Sequence record: NC_061450.1 | Reading direction: 5' to 3' (one strand) | Length of the DNA stretch: 64,000 nucleotides | In this document: piece after piece, positions 3 through 31,532 of the stretch | Numbering within the stretch: position 1 is the stretch's first letter | Layout of the letters: each line of letters opens with the position of its first letter | The notes under the pieces: model-generated | Databases searched by the model: none | What the model was told of the DNA's origin: nothing | The model's input: the letters and a program-made list of their open reading frames with translations, nothing else | Position numbers and translations under genes: made by a program

Positions 3-152
3 GACGACGCCGTGCGCTTCCGTGCTGCCGTCAAAAAGATTGCCGATGTTGAAATTCAATTAGGCACAACGCTGCGCCTCACTCCCAAGAAGTATCTTGG
101 CTTTTGCGCGGCGCTGAAAAAACTTAAACAGTCTGGAGATAAAAATGTCTGA
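3..152 (+). CDS. 3' end of hypothetical protein (partial, runs off window start)
   Basis: Open frame from position 3 to TGA at 150-152, overlapping the ATG at 145. Confidence 0.6.
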   Translation, partial: DDAVRFRAAVKKIADVEIQLGTTLRLTPKKYLGFCAALKKLKQSGDKNV

Positions 153-1884
153 GATTACGCTGGAGCAGTATAAGGAGTTGCGTGCGCGTAACATTCTTGC
201 AGAGCCACCTTTTCTCGTTATCAACAAAACAAGTCCGCAGGGTTCAATCAGTTTTGAAGTTGTAGGCGATAACCTCAAATCGAAAACTGTTACCCTGCCA
301 GCATCGTATGCCTCTGTTGACCTGACGCACGTTGCCAGCGTTGATGCCCTGTTGTCCAGCTCAAGCCTCAAAGCATTGCTGGATAAAAACATGGTAGCAA
401 TCGTTAACGCTGACCAGATCGTTCCGCCTGTAAAAGCAATTGACCAGCCTACAGTTGATGCTGTGAATGCTGGTGGAACTGTTATCAGCGGTACCACTGT
501 TCCCAACGCAACAGTAATCGTGATGCAGGGTACCAACACGTGGCGCGGTGCATCTGACCCAAGTGGTCGCTTCTCAATTCCAATCTCGGGCCTGGTCGAA
601 GGTGATTACACCATCATGATCAGTGCGGAAGGCTATCAGACTCAGGGCTTCACGTTTACCGCTGGTCCAGTGGTTGAACAAGCATACCCTGCTGTCACTG
701 ACATTCAAGGTGAATATCGTGGAACGCATGTTACGGGCACCACAGTTCCTGACGCTGATGTATCTGCTACTTTTGGGGGCAAATCCTACGACGCTACTGC
801 CAACAGCAACGGCGCGTTTGATATTACCACCGACCCGCTGCCATTCGAGCCTGTCACTCTGACGTTTGCCGCCGAGGGCTACACAACTCATGAGCAGACC
901 TTCACACCAGCCGCAATCGAAATGACTGGTCTGTCTGTCAGCAAGCCTGAGTTCTTTGACACAGAGATCACTGGCTCAAGCGTTGCAGGCGAAGAAGATC
1001 TGGTAGTCATGGTTGCTCCTGATGGTCAGCAAGAAGTGCAGGCCGAAGTTGCAACTGACGGCACGTACAAGGCAACCATTCAGCCTCTGAAAGGCAGTGT
1101 GAAAGTCTATGCCAATGCTCCTGGCTATCGTCAGTCCGAAGTTACTGCACAGCCTGATCGCGGTACTCTGGGTAATGTGACTGTTGAAAGTGTTAGCGAG
1201 ACTTCTACTGAACTGCGTGGTAGTGTGGCTGGTATCAACAGCGCTGCCGGTGCAACGGTTGAAGTTGTGACTGAGGCGGGACAGACTAACGGCGTGGTAA
1301 ATGCTGACGGTTCATTTGTTGTGCCTAACGTGAACTTCTCCAAAGGCACAACAGGTACTGTTACAGTCAAGTCTGATTTCTATCAGGACAAGACAACCAA
1401 GTTTGATATCCTGAAGGACTTCTCAACGTTCACTATCGACCGTGCCGTTGAAGGCAATCCTGTTACTGGTACCACTGAGCCCAGCGCTAACATCGTCCTG
1501 ACTCAGAGCAACAACACCGCATCTGGTACATCAAACACTGATGGCCAGTACGCTATCGACTTCCCAGAAGTTGTTTCTGGTGAGTTGCAGGTAGACCTCA
1601 GCAAGCCGGGCTTTGCGCCTGAGCAGATTGAAGTACGCGTTGAAGTTGAAACGCGTCTGGTACTCAACCCTGTTGCGGTTGATGCTGCGTCTATCACAGG
1701 TCAAGGCACGCCTAACGCAGACGTTACCTTTACACAGGGTGCAAACACTGCAACTGGTAAAGTCGGCACCGACGGTCAACTTGACCTGCCTCTGACTTCT
1801 AACGTAGTTGCTGGTGAGTATACCGTAACTGCAAGTTTGTCTGGTTATGAAACCAAGACTTTGACTGAAACTGTTTCTGCTTAA
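145..1884 (+). CDS. Putative virion protein with six tandem Ig-like (bacterial Ig/carboxypeptidase-regulatory-like) domains
   Basis: 579 aa; GGAG RBS; six ~80-aa beta-rich repeats of pattern (I/V)TGTT.P.A.V...G...DG.(F/Y).I...GY; N-terminal ~90-aa domain shared with next ORF. Confidence 0.75.
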   Translation: MSEITLEQYKELRARNILAEPPFLVINKTSPQGSISFEVVGDNLKSKTVTLPASYASVDLTHVASVDALLSSSSLKALLDKNMVAIVNADQIVPPVKAIDQPTVDAVNAGGTVISGTTVPNATVIVMQGTNTWRGASDPSGRFSIPISGLVEGDYTIMISAEGYQTQGFTFTAGPVVEQAYPAVTDIQGEYRGTHVTGTTVPDADVSATFGGKSYDATANSNGAFDITTDPLPFEPVTLTFAAEGYTTHEQTFTPAAIEMTGLSVSKPEFFDTEITGSSVAGEEDLVVMVAPDGQQEVQAEVATDGTYKATIQPLKGSVKVYANAPGYRQSEVTAQPDRGTLGNVTVESVSETSTELRGSVAGINSAAGATVEVVTEAGQTNGVVNADGSFVVPNVNFSKGTTGTVTVKSDFYQDKTTKFDILKDFSTFTIDRAVEGNPVTGTTEPSANIVLTQSNNTASGTSNTDGQYAIDFPEVVSGELQVDLSKPGFAPEQIEVRVEVETRLVLNPVAVDAASITGQGTPNADVTFTQGANTATGKVGTDGQLDLPLTSNVVAGEYTVTASLSGYETKTLTETVSA

Positions 1885-11181: not shown

Positions 11182-12225
11182 ATGAAGAATAAGTCCAATC
11201 TCACAGGTGGCCAGATAGAAAACGTTATGGACACGCTGCTCCACGATTGTCTTCGCGAGATTGTTGAGAACACCGGCGTGTTCGACGTACAACTGACCTA
11301 CCTGCTGAGCTTGATTACATCAAACAAGAAGCGCAAGCCGCACAACGCTGCTAACCGTGACCGAGCAATCAGCCTTTTGATTCGTGCATTGAGTGTGCCT
11401 CGTGATCAAAAGATGCAGTACATTATGGAAGTGAAGATGGAAAGAAATTTCATCTACATGTTCCTGCAAAATGTAATTAACCGTTACTACCACCCATACG
11501 TAGACTTGTACCGCAAATATCTTGTTGTGCAAGACCCTGACCAACGTCGTCGCTATCAGGCACAGCTTGATGCCTATGTGCGTACTGTGGGTGCTGAGTC
11601 ACGTTCAAAGTTGTTTGTGGCACTCAACAACCTAAACGATCTCCTGCCTGTGTTCATGAGTTATTTCCACACTGTGGTAGATGACTTTTATCGCCTTTGC
11701 ACACAGCACGCAAAATTCTATGTTGATACCAATAGAGGCAAGCAGTATGACTCTAAGGACGTGCGCCAGAACTTCCTGCGCAACGTTATCATTGCTATCA
11801 ACAAGTATGACTCCAGTCGCGGTGCGATTGTGAGTTACGTCAAGTGGTGGATTCTGAATGCTCAAACGTGTAGCAGTTCAGAGCATGAGTATGGCATTGC
11901 CTATACCATACCTCAGACCCAGCGCAAGAAACTTGCGTCAGGGCAGGACACCACGTCAGTGAATTTCTCGGTTAGTCTTGACGCTCCCGCATCTGAGTCC
12001 GATGAAGGGATGGACGCATCGCTGCATCACAAGGTAAGTGATAGTCACCACCTTGAAGACACAGTGGACAGCGGACGACGTGCTGAGAAAATTGGGCTGT
12101 TGATCAAACGCATCGATCCCATGGGCATCGCCCGCCTCACAATGGATATACCTGAGGTGTTCGAGCCAGAAGAACGACAACACATGCGAAATCACATGCT
12201 CAAACAGGGCCTGTTAAACAAATAG
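11182..12225 (+). CDS. Phage RNA polymerase sigma factor, sigma70-family region 2/3-like
   Basis: AINKYDSSRGAIVSYVKWWILNA resembles sigma70 region 2.3-2.4 (AVDKF..RRGYKFSTYATWWIRQA); VSLDAP resembles region 3.2; no clear region 4 HTH. Confidence 0.7.
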   Translation: MKNKSNLTGGQIENVMDTLLHDCLREIVENTGVFDVQLTYLLSLITSNKKRKPHNAANRDRAISLLIRALSVPRDQKMQYIMEVKMERNFIYMFLQNVINRYYHPYVDLYRKYLVVQDPDQRRRYQAQLDAYVRTVGAESRSKLFVALNNLNDLLPVFMSYFHTVVDDFYRLCTQHAKFYVDTNRGKQYDSKDVRQNFLRNVIIAINKYDSSRGAIVSYVKWWILNAQTCSSSEHEYGIAYTIPQTQRKKLASGQDTTSVNFSVSLDAPASESDEGMDASLHHKVSDSHHLEDTVDSGRRAEKIGLLIKRIDPMGIARLTMDIPEVFEPEERQHMRNHMLKQGLLNK

Positions 12226-28289: not shown

Positions 28290-28615
28290 ACAAAGAACAA
28301 CGCACTCGCATCATTACAGCAATGATGACCAATCTTATCGAGATTCGCAAAGTCACTGACATTGTGGTTCACGAACAAACCGTTGAGTTCAAGCTCAGGG
28401 GTAGTGCTTACATCGCGGAGATCTCTGAAAACCATCCCGATAAAATCAGTGTGCGCTTCCGCGACGACTATCAGTGGGCGCCCGACATTGAAAAGCAACT
28501 CAACCATCAGCCTCCAGTTAAGCATGTTGCCAATCGCGATCTGTTGCACCGTCCTCCGCAAAAGCCCAAGACGTTGCATGACGTGATTCAGTCCAAGTCT
28601 GTGCGTCGCAGTTAA
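28286..28615 (+). CDS. Hypothetical protein
   Basis: GGAGG RBS, ATGA overlap. Confidence 0.75.
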   Translation: MNKEQRTRIITAMMTNLIEIRKVTDIVVHEQTVEFKLRGSAYIAEISENHPDKISVRFRDDYQWAPDIEKQLNHQPPVKHVANRDLLHRPPQKPKTLHDVIQSKSVRRS

Positions 28616-28795
28616 TTGTTTGTAGAGGCTATTCCACCAGAGTGGCCTCGTTAAACAACAACCGCGGGGGATGGACTGTAAATGATAGATAGCACATAGC
28701 ACCAACACCAGAATTTGTAGTGGCAGTAAAGGCAATACAACAATCCACCGGCATAGACCGGTATACAGAAAATACCTAATCTCTAGGACATAAAA

Positions 28796-31303
28796 ATGAA
28801 AACTGCAATCAAAACTTCTATCGTAGCTTCTCTGGTAACTCTGGCTCTGGCACACGTATCAGCGGCCAATGCAACAACGCAGTATGACGGCGGCCTGATT
28901 AATGTGGGTGGCGGTGATGGTGGTCTGATTAACATCGGCGGTAACGGTGGCTTTATCAATATCGGAGGCAACACTGGAACTCAGACAGCCCTGAATGGTC
29001 TGAACACCAATCTGAATATTCTCGACGGCAAAGTAACCGTGATCGACGGTAAAGTTGTTGACCTGTCGAATAACGTTGCTGGTCTCAATACCACAGTATC
29101 TGGACTCAGCGGCACTGTGTCGCAGAACACCAAAGACATTGGTACGCTGACCAACAGCCTGAACTCGCAGAACACCAGCCTGACTAACGCTATCAATGCG
29201 GGCGACAAGCTGTTAAACGACAAACTGACCTCAGCTACTACCACGCTGGGCAGCCAGATCAAATCTACCAACGATCTCGCGGTGCAGGGTAACGCAACTG
29301 CAAACAACGCACTGACCACTGTGTACGGTCTGATCCCTCAGGTACTCAACAACGGCAAAGCAATCGCCGATGTGAAAACTGACCTGACCAAAGCTGTTGA
29401 TCAGGGCAAGCAAGTTGCAGGTCAACTCAATACCAAAATCGATGGTGTTGATTCAAAGGTTGATTCGCTGGCACAACAGGGGCAGGCTGCCTACACCGAA
29501 CTGAAAGGCGATGTGTCTCAGGTTGATGGACGTGTGACTGACCTCGCTAATCAGGGCAAGCAAGTTGCAGGCCAGCTCAACGATAAGATTGATGGCGTTT
29601 CAACTCAGACCAACGGCCGTATCGATGACCTGACTGCGAAAGCAAATCAGTTTGCATCCGATACAACTGCCGCTATCAGCAACGTTAACGATAAAGCCGA
29701 CGCAGGTATTGCGCTGGGTGCTGCCGCTAACGTAAAAGCTGATCTGGTTGGTGCTGGCCTCATCGCTAACTCTGTGTGGGATGCGCATCAGCAAAAAGAG
29801 ATTGATGCCAACACTAAAGGTCTGGCAGCAAACAACGCGCTGGATGCGAAACAGCAAACGCAGATTGACGCGAATACTAAGACGGGTACTCAGAACTCCA
29901 AAGACATTGGCGGTCTGCAATCCGGTCTCGCGGCAAACACAGCGGTTGATGCGAAACAACAGCATCAGATTGACTGGCTGAAAAGTGACTCGGCTGCCAA
30001 CAAAGCAACTGACGCTAAACAGCAAACGCAGATCGATGCCAATACCAAAACTGGCACGCAGAACGGTAAAGCAATCGGCGAACTGCAAACTGGTCTGGCT
30101 GTTACCGATGCACGTTCAATCGACAACAGCGGCCGCATCACTGATCTGGTTAACGTCACCGATAAAGATCGTACTGACATTAACACCCGTGTTGACGGTG
30201 TGTCCAATCAAGTCAACAAGAACGGTGAGCGCATTACCGACCTGGTCAATGTGACTGATAAAGACCGCACCGACATTAACGTGCGTGTTGATGGCGTGTC
30301 TAATCAAGTCAATCAAAACACCAACGACATTAAGAACGTGGGCAACGTTGCAAATGATGCGTACAACAACGCATACAACGCGCAGCAAACTGCCAACGCC
30401 GGTGTAGCAATCGGGCAGGACGCCAAGAACACTGCAATCAATGCGCAGAACACCGCGGACGTTGCAGTTGGTATCGGCCAGAAGAACAGCAACGATATCA
30501 TCAACACCAACAATGTTCTGAACCAGAACGTTAAGCAAACCCAGACCAACACCACCAACATTGTTAATCTGGATAATCGCACTACGCAGAACACCTCTGA
30601 TATTCAGACCACGCGCAACGATCTGACCAACACCAACAATGTGCTGACTCAGAACGTCAAGCAAACGCAGTCGAATACCAATCGTATCACGGTGAATGAA
30701 GGCAACATTGCCAACAACACCAAGCAGATCAATGTTAACACCACCAACATTGCTAACCACGAAACGCGCATCACCAACAGCGAAACCAACATTGCGAACA
30801 ACACCACTGAGATCAAAAAGACTCAGACTGTTGTCAACAACCAGGGTAAAGTGTTGCAGAACCATGAGACGCGTATCACCAACAACGAAACCAACATCAA
30901 CAACCTGGCTGGTGATTACTACCAGTTCCAAGATACCTACAACTACAACAATCAGGTCATCAATCAGAACATCCAGAGCTACTCTAATCAGGCTGTTCAG
31001 AAATCGAAAGCGTACACTGATCAGCAGGTCGGTAACCTGCGCAACGATTGGCAGCGTGGACGCAGCGAAGACCAGAGCGAATATCGTAGCGGTATCGCGG
31101 GTGTTGCTGCAATGTCTAACATCCCTAACGTTCCAGGCACCAAGTGGAACATGGGTGCAGGCGTGGGCCAGTTCCACGACAAGACAGCGCTGGCCGTTGG
31201 TGGTCACCTGAACATCAGCAACAACGTTTCTGTAAAAGCAAGTCTGGGCTTTGCTAATGACAGTGACGCCGTCGCTGGTATCGGTATGAGCATCGGTAAC
31301 TAA
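28796..31303 (+). CDS. Trimeric autotransporter adhesin (YadA-like)
   Basis: Signal peptide MKTAIK...AHVSAANA; Asn/Thr-rich heptad stalk; SKAYTDQQV neck; YadA-type anchor SGIAGVAAM...GAGVGQFHDKTALAVG...VKASLG...GIGMSIGN. Confidence 0.9.
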   Translation: MKTAIKTSIVASLVTLALAHVSAANATTQYDGGLINVGGGDGGLINIGGNGGFINIGGNTGTQTALNGLNTNLNILDGKVTVIDGKVVDLSNNVAGLNTTVSGLSGTVSQNTKDIGTLTNSLNSQNTSLTNAINAGDKLLNDKLTSATTTLGSQIKSTNDLAVQGNATANNALTTVYGLIPQVLNNGKAIADVKTDLTKAVDQGKQVAGQLNTKIDGVDSKVDSLAQQGQAAYTELKGDVSQVDGRVTDLANQGKQVAGQLNDKIDGVSTQTNGRIDDLTAKANQFASDTTAAISNVNDKADAGIALGAAANVKADLVGAGLIANSVWDAHQQKEIDANTKGLAANNALDAKQQTQIDANTKTGTQNSKDIGGLQSGLAANTAVDAKQQHQIDWLKSDSAANKATDAKQQTQIDANTKTGTQNGKAIGELQTGLAVTDARSIDNSGRITDLVNVTDKDRTDINTRVDGVSNQVNKNGERITDLVNVTDKDRTDINVRVDGVSNQVNQNTNDIKNVGNVANDAYNNAYNAQQTANAGVAIGQDAKNTAINAQNTADVAVGIGQKNSNDIINTNNVLNQNVKQTQTNTTNIVNLDNRTTQNTSDIQTTRNDLTNTNNVLTQNVKQTQSNTNRITVNEGNIANNTKQINVNTTNIANHETRITNSETNIANNTTEIKKTQTVVNNQGKVLQNHETRITNNETNINNLAGDYYQFQDTYNYNNQVINQNIQSYSNQAVQKSKAYTDQQVGNLRNDWQRGRSEDQSEYRSGIAGVAAMSNIPNVPGTKWNMGAGVGQFHDKTALAVGGHLNISNNVSVKASLGFANDSDAVAGIGMSIGN
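29402..30905 (+). repeat. Intragenic duplicated stalk modules in adhesin
   Basis: Pairs with periods 150 nt (QGKQVAGQLN), 168 nt (DAKQQTQIDANTKTGTQN), 96 nt (RITDLVNVTDKDRTDIN), 126 nt (NTNNVL.QNVKQTQ), 105 nt (NHETRITN). Confidence 0.85.
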
Positions 31304-31314
31304 GTAAAACCTCT

Positions 31315-31338
31315 GGGTGCCTTCGGGCACCCTTTGTT
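31315..31338 (+). terminator. Intrinsic terminator (UUCG hairpin)
   Basis: GGGTGCC-TTCG-GGCACCC-TTTGTT. Confidence 0.85.
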
Positions 31339-31358
31339 ACTTGTCAGGAGATTTCAAT

Positions 31359-31532
31359 ATGGGTTATCCAACTTGCGCTGATTGCGGTTGTCGAATCCGC
31401 AGCGGCTATTGCACCAACTGTCAGGAAGAAGCCTATATCATGGACGTTCAGGCGGCAGAAATGGATATAGAGTTCAGTCCTGAATTTTCAGAAGTAGCCG
31501 CAGAGCAACGTAGACCAATTAAAGGTGAGTAA
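31359..31532 (+). CDS. Small zinc-ribbon protein
   Basis: CADCG...YCTNC; CAGGAG RBS. Confidence 0.65.
   Translation: MGYPTCADCGCRIRSGYCTNCQEEAYIMDVQAAEMDIEFSPEFSEVAAEQRRPIKGE

What the first reader, a model, noticed from the sequence alone, without database searches (positions are those of the whole stretch)
28796..31303. Complete type Vc (YadA-like) adhesin encoded by a phage
Seen: Sec signal peptide, Gly-rich GGLIN(V/I)GG head repeats, long N/T-rich stalk and membrane anchor, with its own upstream motifs and terminator. Known: trimeric autotransporters are bacterial outer-membrane adhesins causing autoaggregation and surface adhesion. Inference: infected cells display it to clump with uninfected hosts or stick to plant surfaces so progeny are released among new hosts, or to shield receptors.
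Basis: partly seen in the sequence, partly recalled or inferred. Interest (0 to 1): 0.65.

Follow-up and report, generated by a model that had tools for sequence, protein, structure and literature searches.

The report
Phage-encoded trimeric autotransporter surface fibre
A lytic jumbo virus of the fire-blight bacterium carries an intact, conserved gene for a very long bacterial-type surface fibre that the infected cell should display on its outer membrane. The gene was already annotated, similar genes sit in many lytic phages, and what they do for the phage is untested.

Summary
The window is Erwinia phage pEa_SNUABM_5 (267 kb, no integrase found). ORF 28796-31303(+) is gp273, already labelled "putative autoagglutinating adhesin" in GenBank.

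- a classic Sec signal peptide;
- three Gly-rich nonapeptide repeats;
- about 570 helical residues of polar heptad coiled coil, roughly 85 nm;
- a YadA_anchor domain above Pfam's cut-off, whose model (helix plus four strands) matches only solved AtaA, Hia and YadA anchors;
- a conserved terminator.

Caveats: there is no canonical YadA head or neck, no sigma-70 promoter match, and the protein ends in Asn instead of the usual aromatic residue. That Asn is conserved in two close relatives.

The gene is under purifying selection (dN/dS 0.12). Its nearest relatives are all phage-borne, and no bacterial match exceeded about 30-43% identity. YadA-anchor proteins of 122-860 aa, all with signal peptides, sit in non-structural regions of at least eight lytic phage groups, which a 2013 paper had already noted.

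So it is a real type Vc autotransporter made by the infected cell, not a virion fibre. Its purpose (adhesion or aggregation versus surface shielding) is inference only. The scan had flagged this same stretch before (s1-414252). Novelty is low, but the open functional question is testable.

The parts
28618..28658 (+). Stable hairpin just after the preceding gene (gp272); a terminator-like insulator upstream of the adhesin gene
   Evidence: RNA fold -24 kcal/mol, z -2.7; sequence. The U-tail is weak, so terminator function is inferred.
28747..28762 (+). Small hairpin in the 5' leader, followed by a conserved ATACAGAAAA stretch
   Evidence: Fold. The stem is kept with different letters in Yoloswag (alignment A4). 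Function unknown.
28785..28788 (+). Shine-Dalgarno AGGA, 7 nt before the ATG
   Evidence: Read directly.
28796..28873 (+). Sec-type signal peptide (residues 1 to about 26; cleavage after VSA, SAA or ANA)
   Evidence: The same architecture is present in all ten phage homologues read. No SignalP run was possible, so this is a rule-based call.
28886..28972 (+). Distal tip: three Gly-rich nonapeptide repeats (residues 31-59), probably a small beta structure
   Evidence: dN/dS 0.06. No Pfam match, no informative Atlas match, and only Yoloswag found by word search. Short strands at low pLDDT in the monomer model.
28973..31075 (+). Stalk (residues 60-760): five long helical segments (60-172, 181-317, 379-418, 445-539, 564-726) broken by four short non-helical connectors
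   Evidence: AF2 secondary structure (low pLDDT, so only the helix/non-helix pattern is used). Heptad power. Profile hits to YadA stalk fragments, EibD and the P22 needle coiled coil.
30134..30332 (+). 96-nt (32-residue) tandem stalk repeat: 2 copies here, 3 copies in relatives
   Evidence: TRF. All four public runs and L012 carry one extra in-frame unit.
30686..30916 (+). Eleven unbroken heptads (residues 631-707) with I/V/L at a and Asn or another polar residue at d
   Evidence: This is the most conserved stalk part across four phage groups.
31076..31300 (+). YadA-like membrane anchor (residues 761-835): pore helix plus four beta strands; ends ...GIGMSIGN
   Evidence: Pfam PF03895. YadA anchor 2lme at E 5e-4 with one sequence and 3e-8 with the profile. 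AF2 pLDDT 89 and Foldseek top five all TAA anchors. Terminal Asn conserved in L011 and L012.
31315..31342 (+). Intrinsic terminator (7-bp GC stem, TTCG loop, T-run) 12 nt after the stop codon
   Evidence: Conserved position with compensatory stem changes in L011, L012, L013, L014 and L015.

Best explanation
gp273 is a genuine, intact type Vc (trimeric autotransporter) protein that is under selection and is made by the infected Erwinia cell, not built into the virion.

Inferred pathway:
1. The monocistronic, terminator-flanked gene is expressed during the latent period.
2. The Sec system exports the precursor and the signal peptide is removed.
3. The host BAM machinery inserts three C-terminal four-strand units as one 12-stranded barrel.
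4. The Cys-free passenger threads out and zips into a trimeric polar coiled coil about 85-100 nm long, capped by a small Gly-rich tip.

Most likely purpose: the fibre makes the infected cell sticky, through tip- or stalk-mediated adhesion or auto-aggregation. That would keep the cell in contact with neighbouring hosts or surfaces when the slowly diffusing jumbo virions are released.

Shown here: family, fold, signal peptide, stalk chemistry, purifying selection, non-structural context and phage-only close relatives.

Inferred: export, trimerisation, surface display, timing and the adhesive role.

My odds are about 0.9 that it is an outer-membrane autotransporter of the infected cell, and about 0.4-0.45 that adhesion or aggregation is its main role.
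For: - Family and fold: PF03895 above the cut-off. The model of residues 636-835 has pLDDT 89, with one long helix plus four strands. Its only significant PDB matches are the AtaA, Hia and YadA anchors, TM 0.72-0.82 normalised to target length.
- Export signal and composition: a Sec signal peptide, no Cys and three Pro in 835 residues.
- Stalk: polar-core heptads and profile hits only to trimeric coiled coils.
- Selection: dN/dS 0.12 over the whole length and 0.06 at the tip. Third-position bias of variants in four independent studies.
- Not structural: the neighbours are orphan small genes, and replication, recombination and sigma-factor genes lie in the same region.
- Accessory gene: within the jumbo clade it was found only in pEa_SNUABM_5, Yoloswag and some metagenomic relatives.
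- Homologues in phiEco32, N4-like, T4-like and Privateer-like phages also lie among early or nucleotide-metabolism genes, and all have signal peptides.
- No integrase was found.
- Adhesion-type anatomy: a conserved distal tip that differs between lineages, and a stalk whose repeat number varies in frame.
Against: - There is no expression, localisation or phenotype data.
- The trimer test could not be run.
- The C-terminal residue is Asn, whereas the other nine phage homologues end in F or W. BAM recognition may therefore be atypical.
- There is no canonical head or neck, and the tip has no relatives of known function.
- Phage homologues of 122-194 aa have almost no passenger. The ancestral phage role may therefore lie in the anchor or in a short stub, such as masking a receptor, rather than in adhesion.
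- No promoter was identified.
Confidence: 0.5

Rival explanations
1. Surface shield or exclusion device. The lawn of fibres (or, in the short phage versions, a stub next to the barrel) covers or binds receptors on the infected cell and on its debris. This blocks superinfection by competing phages and stops progeny from being wasted on lysed-cell fragments, as Llp, Cor and TraT-type outer-membrane proteins do.
For: The family occurs in at least eight lytic phage groups, and the passenger can shrink to a few dozen residues. It lies in early or non-structural regions. Strong purifying rather than diversifying selection fits a conserved host target.
Against: No receptor is known for this phage. 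The phage carries an EPS-depolymerase-like spike gene nearby, which suggests that capsule, not a protein, is the first receptor. A sparse fibre would not obviously mask capsule. No autotransporter has been shown to act this way, as far as my searches found.
Confidence: 0.25
2. Outer-membrane or BAM perturbation. The conserved part is the barrel, and mass production of it loads the BAM pathway or alters envelope properties (vesiculation, lysis timing, host outer-membrane protein display). The passenger would be secondary.
For: The anchor and the adjoining 150 residues are the only parts shared by all phage lineages. Minimal versions exist.
Against: In the pEa_SNUABM_5 lineage the whole 760-residue passenger is under the same constraint as the anchor: dN/dS is 0.06-0.12 in every segment except the 26-codon signal peptide (0.40, from four differences). 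A dispensable passenger would not show this.
Confidence: 0.1
3. Virion fibre or tail protein, as RefSeq labels several homologues.
For: RefSeq calls the Yoloswag, phiEco32, SP-076 and CsaP_009 homologues 'tail protein'. PHROG 17426 is filed under 'tail'. YadA-domain proteins of cyanophages are found in virions (PMC9146016).
Against: The label follows the PHROG category, not data. A cleavable Sec signal peptide and an outer-membrane beta-barrel are incompatible with cytoplasmic virion assembly. The gene is not in a structural module and is not conserved across the clade. As far as that paper describes them, the cyanophage proteins share YadA-type domains, and no membrane anchor is mentioned.
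Confidence: 0.05
4. Recently captured host gene with no role for the phage (a passenger or decaying moron).
For: The terminal Asn departs from the usual aromatic beta-signal residue.
Against: dN/dS is 0.12. The frame is intact in all relatives, including three-repeat variants. The terminal Asn is itself conserved. GC content is like the rest of the phage. No close bacterial homologue turned up in the 5.8-billion-protein word search, two pattern scans of 185,579 species genomes, or six-frame searches of 401 Enterobacteriaceae genomes, where the longest matches reached about 30% identity and short anchor-only matches 43%.
Confidence: 0.03

Closest known systems
YadA / Hia / AtaA (prototype trimeric autotransporter adhesins, type Vc secretion)
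   Same: Sec signal peptide, Cys-free passenger, polar-core trimeric coiled-coil stalk, and a C-terminal helix plus four-strand anchor (PF03895). The predicted anchor superposes on the solved AtaA, Hia and YadA anchors.
   Different: Encoded by a lytic phage. No YadA-like head or neck motifs. The passenger is almost all coiled coil (about 85 nm from the helical residues; by my recollection YadA is about 23 nm). The tip is a lineage-specific Gly-rich repeat. The last residue is Asn, not an aromatic. Sequence identity to YadA's anchor is only about 26%.
YadA-anchor proteins of other virulent phages (phiEco32 gp119, Salmonella FSL SP-058/076, Proteus Privateer, Cronobacter CsaP_009, T4-like phiR1-RT g139 and CGG4-1, Pantoea AAM22, Erwinia phiEa2809/Bue1, Yoloswag gp261)
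   Same: All have a signal peptide plus coiled coil plus YadA anchor, lie outside tail modules and have no known function. The yadA homologues of phiEco32 and SP-058/076 (with others) were noted in print in 2013 (PMC3728262). Yoloswag gp261 is a syntenic orthologue at 49-53% identity. Bue1 and phiEa2809 share 62% identity over the last 200 residues.
   Different: gp273 and its close relative L012 are the longest (835-860 aa against 122-751). They carry the Gly-rich tip and end in Asn instead of F or W.
Eib immunoglobulin-binding proteins and Saa of E. coli (prophage- or plasmid-borne TAAs; from my own knowledge, not tested here beyond a weak profile hit)
   Same: Mobile-element-encoded TAAs with long coiled-coil stalks that cause chain formation or auto-agglutination. 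The GenBank name of gp273 derives from similarity to Saa. There is a weak profile hit to EibD (E 0.036).
   Different: Eib genes are lysogenic-conversion genes of temperate prophages, expressed for the benefit of the lysogen. gp273 sits in a phage without an integrase and can only act during a lytic cycle.

Membership tests
Trimeric autotransporter adhesin (type Vc) | C-terminal YadA-like membrane anchor domain (Pfam PF03895) above the curated cut-off | tested here: met
   36.2 bits against a cut-off of 22.7, residues 781-833. 42.2 bits in the six-frame genome search. The profile matches YadA anchor 2lme at E 3e-8.
Trimeric autotransporter adhesin (type Vc) | Anchor topology: one pore-traversing helix followed by four beta strands per chain, superposable on solved anchors | tested here: met
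   AF2 model pLDDT 89, H2-139 then E149-158, 161-173, 176-185, 190-198. The Foldseek top five are AtaA, Hia (three entries) and YadA anchors, E 1e-5 to 4e-4. The next hit is at E 0.09.
Trimeric autotransporter adhesin (type Vc) | N-terminal Sec signal peptide | tested here: met
   Rule-based reading: two Lys, a 12-residue hydrophobic core, A-x-A sites. Conserved in all homologues. No dedicated predictor was available.
Trimeric autotransporter adhesin (type Vc) | Trimeric coiled-coil stalk next to the anchor, often with Asn at core position d | tested here: met
   Eleven unbroken heptads at residues 631-707, a = I/V/L in 11 of 11, d = Asn in 5 of 11 and otherwise mostly polar. Heptad power. Profile hits only to trimeric coiled coils. 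The oligomeric state itself was not tested.
Trimeric autotransporter adhesin (type Vc) | Aromatic C-terminal residue (beta-signal for BAM) | tested here: not met
   gp273 ends in ...GIGMSIGN. The nine other phage homologues read end in F or W. The Asn is conserved in L011 and L012, so it is not a sequencing error. This feature is usual rather than strictly defining, and the alternating hydrophobic pattern of the last strand is kept.
Trimeric autotransporter adhesin (type Vc) | Homotrimer forming a 12-stranded barrel | not testable with these tools
Trimeric autotransporter adhesin (type Vc) | YadA-like head (PF05658) and neck/stalk (PF05662) modules (common but not obligatory) | tested here: not met
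   No hit in the whole protein at E up to 1, nor in three fragments at E up to 10.
Trimeric autotransporter adhesin (type Vc) | Surface display and adhesive activity | not testable with these tools
   Needs expression, fractionation and aggregation or binding assays.
Phage tail fibre / virion protein | Encoded in a structural module, assembled in the cytoplasm (no export signal), present in virions | tested here: not met
   A signal peptide and an outer-membrane barrel are present. Neighbours are non-structural orphans. Virion content could not be tested, and I found no proteome for this phage or Yoloswag.

The most novel reading that the evidence does not exclude
Lytic phages of many lineages share a phage-resident family of trimeric autotransporters, from 120-aa stubs to 860-aa fibres with exchangeable tips. 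They use it as a general device to re-dress the infected cell's surface during the latent period. In capsule-rich Erwinia, the roughly 100-nm version acts as a 'fishing line' that tethers uninfected hosts or surfaces to the doomed cell, so that slowly diffusing jumbo virions find new hosts. That would be a virus-driven social behaviour of the infected cell that has not been demonstrated for any lytic phage.
Probability: 0.25. Interest if true: 0.7.

Novelty: already known. Interest (0 to 1): 0.35.

Why it matters
The gene itself is not a discovery. The public record names it an adhesin, and yadA-like genes in virulent phages were pointed out years ago.

The unexplored question is why strictly lytic phages, which kill their host within an hour or so, keep an outer-membrane fibre gene under strong purifying selection and trade its C-terminal module among unrelated phages of the same host. 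A clear answer (host recruitment, anchoring in biofilm or on plant surfaces, or exclusion of competitors) would add a new item to the list of ways in which phages manipulate infected cells. It would also bear on how Erwinia phages spread when used against fire blight.

The survey here frames that experiment. It shows signal peptides in every homologue, the size range, phage-only close relatives, the repeat-number polymorphism and the unusual terminal Asn.

Tried and rejected
- The full-length AF2 monomer has mean pLDDT 55. I used only its helix/non-helix pattern and did not use it for fold search.
- The ESM Atlas search of the tip (residues 25-110) scored at most 0.81, which is chance level.
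- The word search of residues 1-130 found only Yoloswag.
- Two pattern scans of genome contigs gave either nothing or only matches of 29-35% identity in Chimaeribacter and Dyella.
- The sigma-70 promoter scan found none. Two conserved upstream words occur nowhere else in the window above chance, so no promoter class or timing could be assigned.
- A PHROG scan of ten neighbours gave no functions.
- Ten literature searches found no functional, proteomic or transcriptomic study of any phage YadA-anchor protein. The phiEco32 genome paper is not held.
- No RNA run holds the gene, so expression is unverified.
- I considered a helper lipoprotein or periplasmic partner (SadB or TpgA type) next to the gene. 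The neighbours show no signal peptide or lipobox.
- I considered RTX-type Ca-binding nonapeptides for the tip. I rejected this by eye because the conserved Asp position is missing.
- The large representative-protein search was not used. It carries no names or context, so it could not separate phage from bacterial relatives.
Full report
**What the window is.** The stretch is 100% identical to Erwinia phage pEa_SNUABM_5 (NC_061450 / MW366843). This is a 267,169-bp jumbo myovirus of the genus Rivsvirus, isolated on Erwinia amylovora. Window coordinate plus 186,000 gives the record coordinate. The ORF at 28796-31303(+) is gp273 (YP_010303062), already annotated "putative autoagglutinating adhesin". 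The complete genome has one YadA_anchor gene and no tyrosine integrase. GC content around the gene (0.48-0.50) matches the rest of the window.

**Checking the observation.** The ORF encodes 835 residues.
- Signal peptide: residues 1-26 form a textbook Sec signal peptide, with Lys2 and Lys6, a 12-residue hydrophobic core, and VSA/SAA/ANA cleavage motifs.
- Gly-rich repeats: residues 32-59 are three tandem Gly-rich units of 9-10 residues.
- Composition: 14.5% Asn, 11% Thr, no Cys and only three Pro.
- Heptad periodicity is strong in most segments. Residues 631-707 are eleven unbroken heptads with I/V/L at position a and Asn or another polar residue at position d. From my own knowledge, this is the polar-core chemistry typical of autotransporter stalks.
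- Pfam finds only YadA_anchor (residues 781-833, E 6.6e-9, 36.2 bits against a cut-off of 22.7). PHROGs places it in phrog_17426, "adhesin".
- A model of residues 636-835 built on 17 sequences has pLDDT 89. It consists of one long helix followed by four strands. Its only significant matches among 350,542 PDB chains are the transmembrane anchors of AtaA, Hia and YadA, with TM 0.72-0.82 on the target. The next hit is at E 0.09.
- The full-length monomer model is of low confidence. It shows five long helices (about 570 helical residues, roughly 85 nm) separated by four short non-helical connectors.
- A profile of seven family members hits only trimeric coiled coils in the PDB: YadA, EibD, the P22 needle and reovirus sigma-1.

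**Flanking signals.**
- Twelve bases after the stop codon lies a 7-bp GC stem with a TTCG loop and a T-run (z -4.0). Five relatives keep it at the same place with compensatory stem changes.
- Upstream there is a -24 kcal/mol hairpin just after gp272, a small leader hairpin that Yoloswag keeps with different letters, and AGGA 7 nt before the ATG.
- No sigma-70-like promoter was found, and the conserved upstream words are unique in the window.
- The gene therefore looks like an insulated single-gene unit, but its promoter and timing remain unknown.

**Caveats to "complete YadA-like".**
- No YadA_head or YadA_stalk/neck model matches, even for fragments at E up to 10. The Gly-rich tip has no relatives beyond its own lineage. 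It is a tip of unknown fold, not a known head.
- The protein ends ...GIGMSIGN, whereas the nine other phage homologues I read all end in F or W. The terminal Asn recurs in two IMG/VR relatives of 94-96% identity over the C-terminal 233 residues. It is therefore a fixed lineage trait rather than an error. The alternating hydrophobic pattern of the last strand is retained.

**The gene is functional.**
- Four independent public data sets carry copies that are mostly 95% or more identical, about 98% on the long contigs: two coded organisms, silage metagenomes and groundwater metagenomes.
- Of the 38 in-ORF variants that were listed (101 further variants were not displayed), 33 are at third codon positions, p = 1e-11.
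- Against the IMG/VR relative L012, dN/dS is 0.12 overall: 0.06 for the tip, 0.10-0.12 along the stalk and 0.09 for the anchor. A second pair (L013/L015) gives 0.09.
- All four runs and L012 carry three copies of a 96-nt (32-residue) stalk repeat, of which the window has two. These are in-frame length variants.

**Relatives.**
- Yoloswag gp261 (742 aa) is a full-length orthologue at 49-53% identity. It has partly the same neighbours: homologues of gp268 and gp270 upstream, and of gp277-279 downstream.
- Two other large viral contigs (L013 at 66 kb and L015 at 287 kb) carry versions of 732-751 aa with a different N-terminal tip and unrelated neighbours.
- The Ackermannviridae Erwinia phages phiEa2809 and Bue1 (470-491 aa), and a 350-kb phage-like contig (P0004, 472 aa), share only the last 200-480 residues, at 62% and 39% identity.
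- The C-terminal stalk-plus-anchor module is therefore exchanged among unrelated phages, while the tips differ.
- No close bacterial homologue was found:
  - In the word search of 5.8 billion proteins, the four best hits are phage or phage-like, and the best bacterial hit is a Croceicoccus adhesin at E 6e-18.
  - Two pattern scans of one genome from each of 185,579 species gave nothing, or 29-35% identity.
  - Six-frame searches of 401 genomes of the GTDB family holding L018 (Chimaeribacter) gave at best 30% identity over long matches and 43% over short anchor-only matches.
- These are samples and pattern-based scans, so the correct wording is "not found", not "absent".

**A wider phage family.**
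- tblastn finds YadA-anchor proteins in 73 phage records. They include phiEco32-like, N4-like (FSL SP-058/076), Privateer-like (Proteus, Cronobacter), T4-like (phiR1-RT, TG1, SKML-39, CGG4-1) and roughly 48-kb Pantoea, Erwinia and Pseudomonas phages.
- I read ten of them. Lengths run from 122 to 835 aa and every one has a Sec-type signal peptide. For phiEco32 this is true once the obviously over-extended RefSeq start is ignored.
- They sit among early or nucleotide-metabolism genes, such as dUTPase, a sigma-70 decoy and the tRNA region. They are not in tail modules.
- RefSeq's "tail protein" label for several of them simply follows the PHROG category.
- A 2013 paper already pointed out yadA homologues in the virulent phages SP-058, SP-076, phiEco32 and My1, away from tail genes, and left the function open (PMC3728262).
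- Cyanophage "YadA-domain" proteins are virion components (PMC9146016). As described there, they share head- or stalk-type domains, and no anchor is mentioned.
- I found no functional, proteomic or transcriptomic study of any anchor-bearing phage protein.

**How it most likely works.**
- Shown: the protein has everything needed to follow the type Vc route, and nothing that fits a virion part.
- Inferred: during the latent period the precursor crosses the inner membrane by Sec. BAM assembles three anchors into one barrel. The Cys-free passenger emerges and folds into a fibre of about 85-100 nm with a Gly-rich tip.
- Purpose: this rests on inference only. I favour adhesion or aggregation of the infected cell (about 0.4-0.45), for three reasons. 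The whole passenger, not just the anchor, is under constraint. The distal tip is conserved within a lineage and swapped between lineages, like a binding module. The longest versions occur in phages of the heavily encapsulated Erwinia and Pantoea, where a fibre would have to clear the capsule.
- Main rival: surface shielding or exclusion (about 0.25), favoured by the existence of nearly passenger-less versions in T4-like phages.
- Other rivals: envelope or BAM perturbation (about 0.1), a virion role (about 0.05) and a decaying capture (about 0.03).

**Novelty and score.**
The scan had also flagged this same stretch before (s1-414252).
- New here, at the descriptive level: signal peptides are present in every homologue read, close relatives are phage-only, the C-terminal module is exchanged between unrelated Erwinia phages, the stalk repeat number is polymorphic, and the terminal Asn is conserved.
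- Interest is moderate to low (0.35). It rests on the open and easily testable question of what an outer-membrane fibre does for a lytic phage.

Noticed in passing
window 31359-31532 (+), gp274; also L027 3490-3660: The 57-aa Cys-rich (CxxC-x8-CxxC) protein just downstream of the adhesin terminator has a 61%-identical homologue, with 74.5% DNA identity over 94 nt. That homologue lies directly downstream of the 369-aa YadA-anchor gene of the unrelated 48-kb phage 15G / Pseudomonas phage 15b. The pair is absent from Yoloswag, L013, L015, phiEa2809 and AAM22. It may be a co-transferred module or a coincidence.
   Followed up: partly
window 30134-30332: The 96-nt stalk repeat is polymorphic in copy number. 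There are two copies in the isolate and three in all four public runs laid and in IMG/VR relative L012, always in frame.
   Followed up: yes
L005 2443-3240 (phiEco32 phi32_119): The RefSeq start of the phiEco32 YadA-anchor gene looks over-extended, with a Cys-rich, non-signal N-terminus. An internal Met gives a normal signal peptide. Several RefSeq 'tail protein' labels for these genes appear to be inherited from the PHROG category rather than from data.
   Followed up: partly
window 145-1884 (+), gp231: Annotated 'LPXTG cell wall anchor protein', but Pfam shows repeated CarboxypepD_reg and bacterial Ig (Big_6) domains. It is more likely an Ig-like decoration or adhesion protein than a Gram-positive sortase substrate.
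   Followed up: partly
window 11182-12225 (+), gp248: A phage-encoded RpoD-family sigma factor lies in the same region as the primase, SSB, UvsX and exonuclease genes. Its promoter specificity might define the timing class of gp273, but no motif was found.
   Followed up: no
window 28600-31400 against public runs X1, X3, X4, X7: Close relatives of this phage region (mostly 95% or more identical) occur in silage and groundwater metagenomes and in two coded organism data sets from four different studies. The phage lineage is therefore environmentally widespread beyond the Korean stream isolate.
   Followed up: partly
L004 (ENA contig k141_38465, 349,780 bp): A jumbo-phage-like contig made of densely packed small same-strand orphan genes carries a 472-aa relative of the adhesin (P0004). 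Its C-terminal two-thirds align with gp273. The host is unknown.
   Followed up: no
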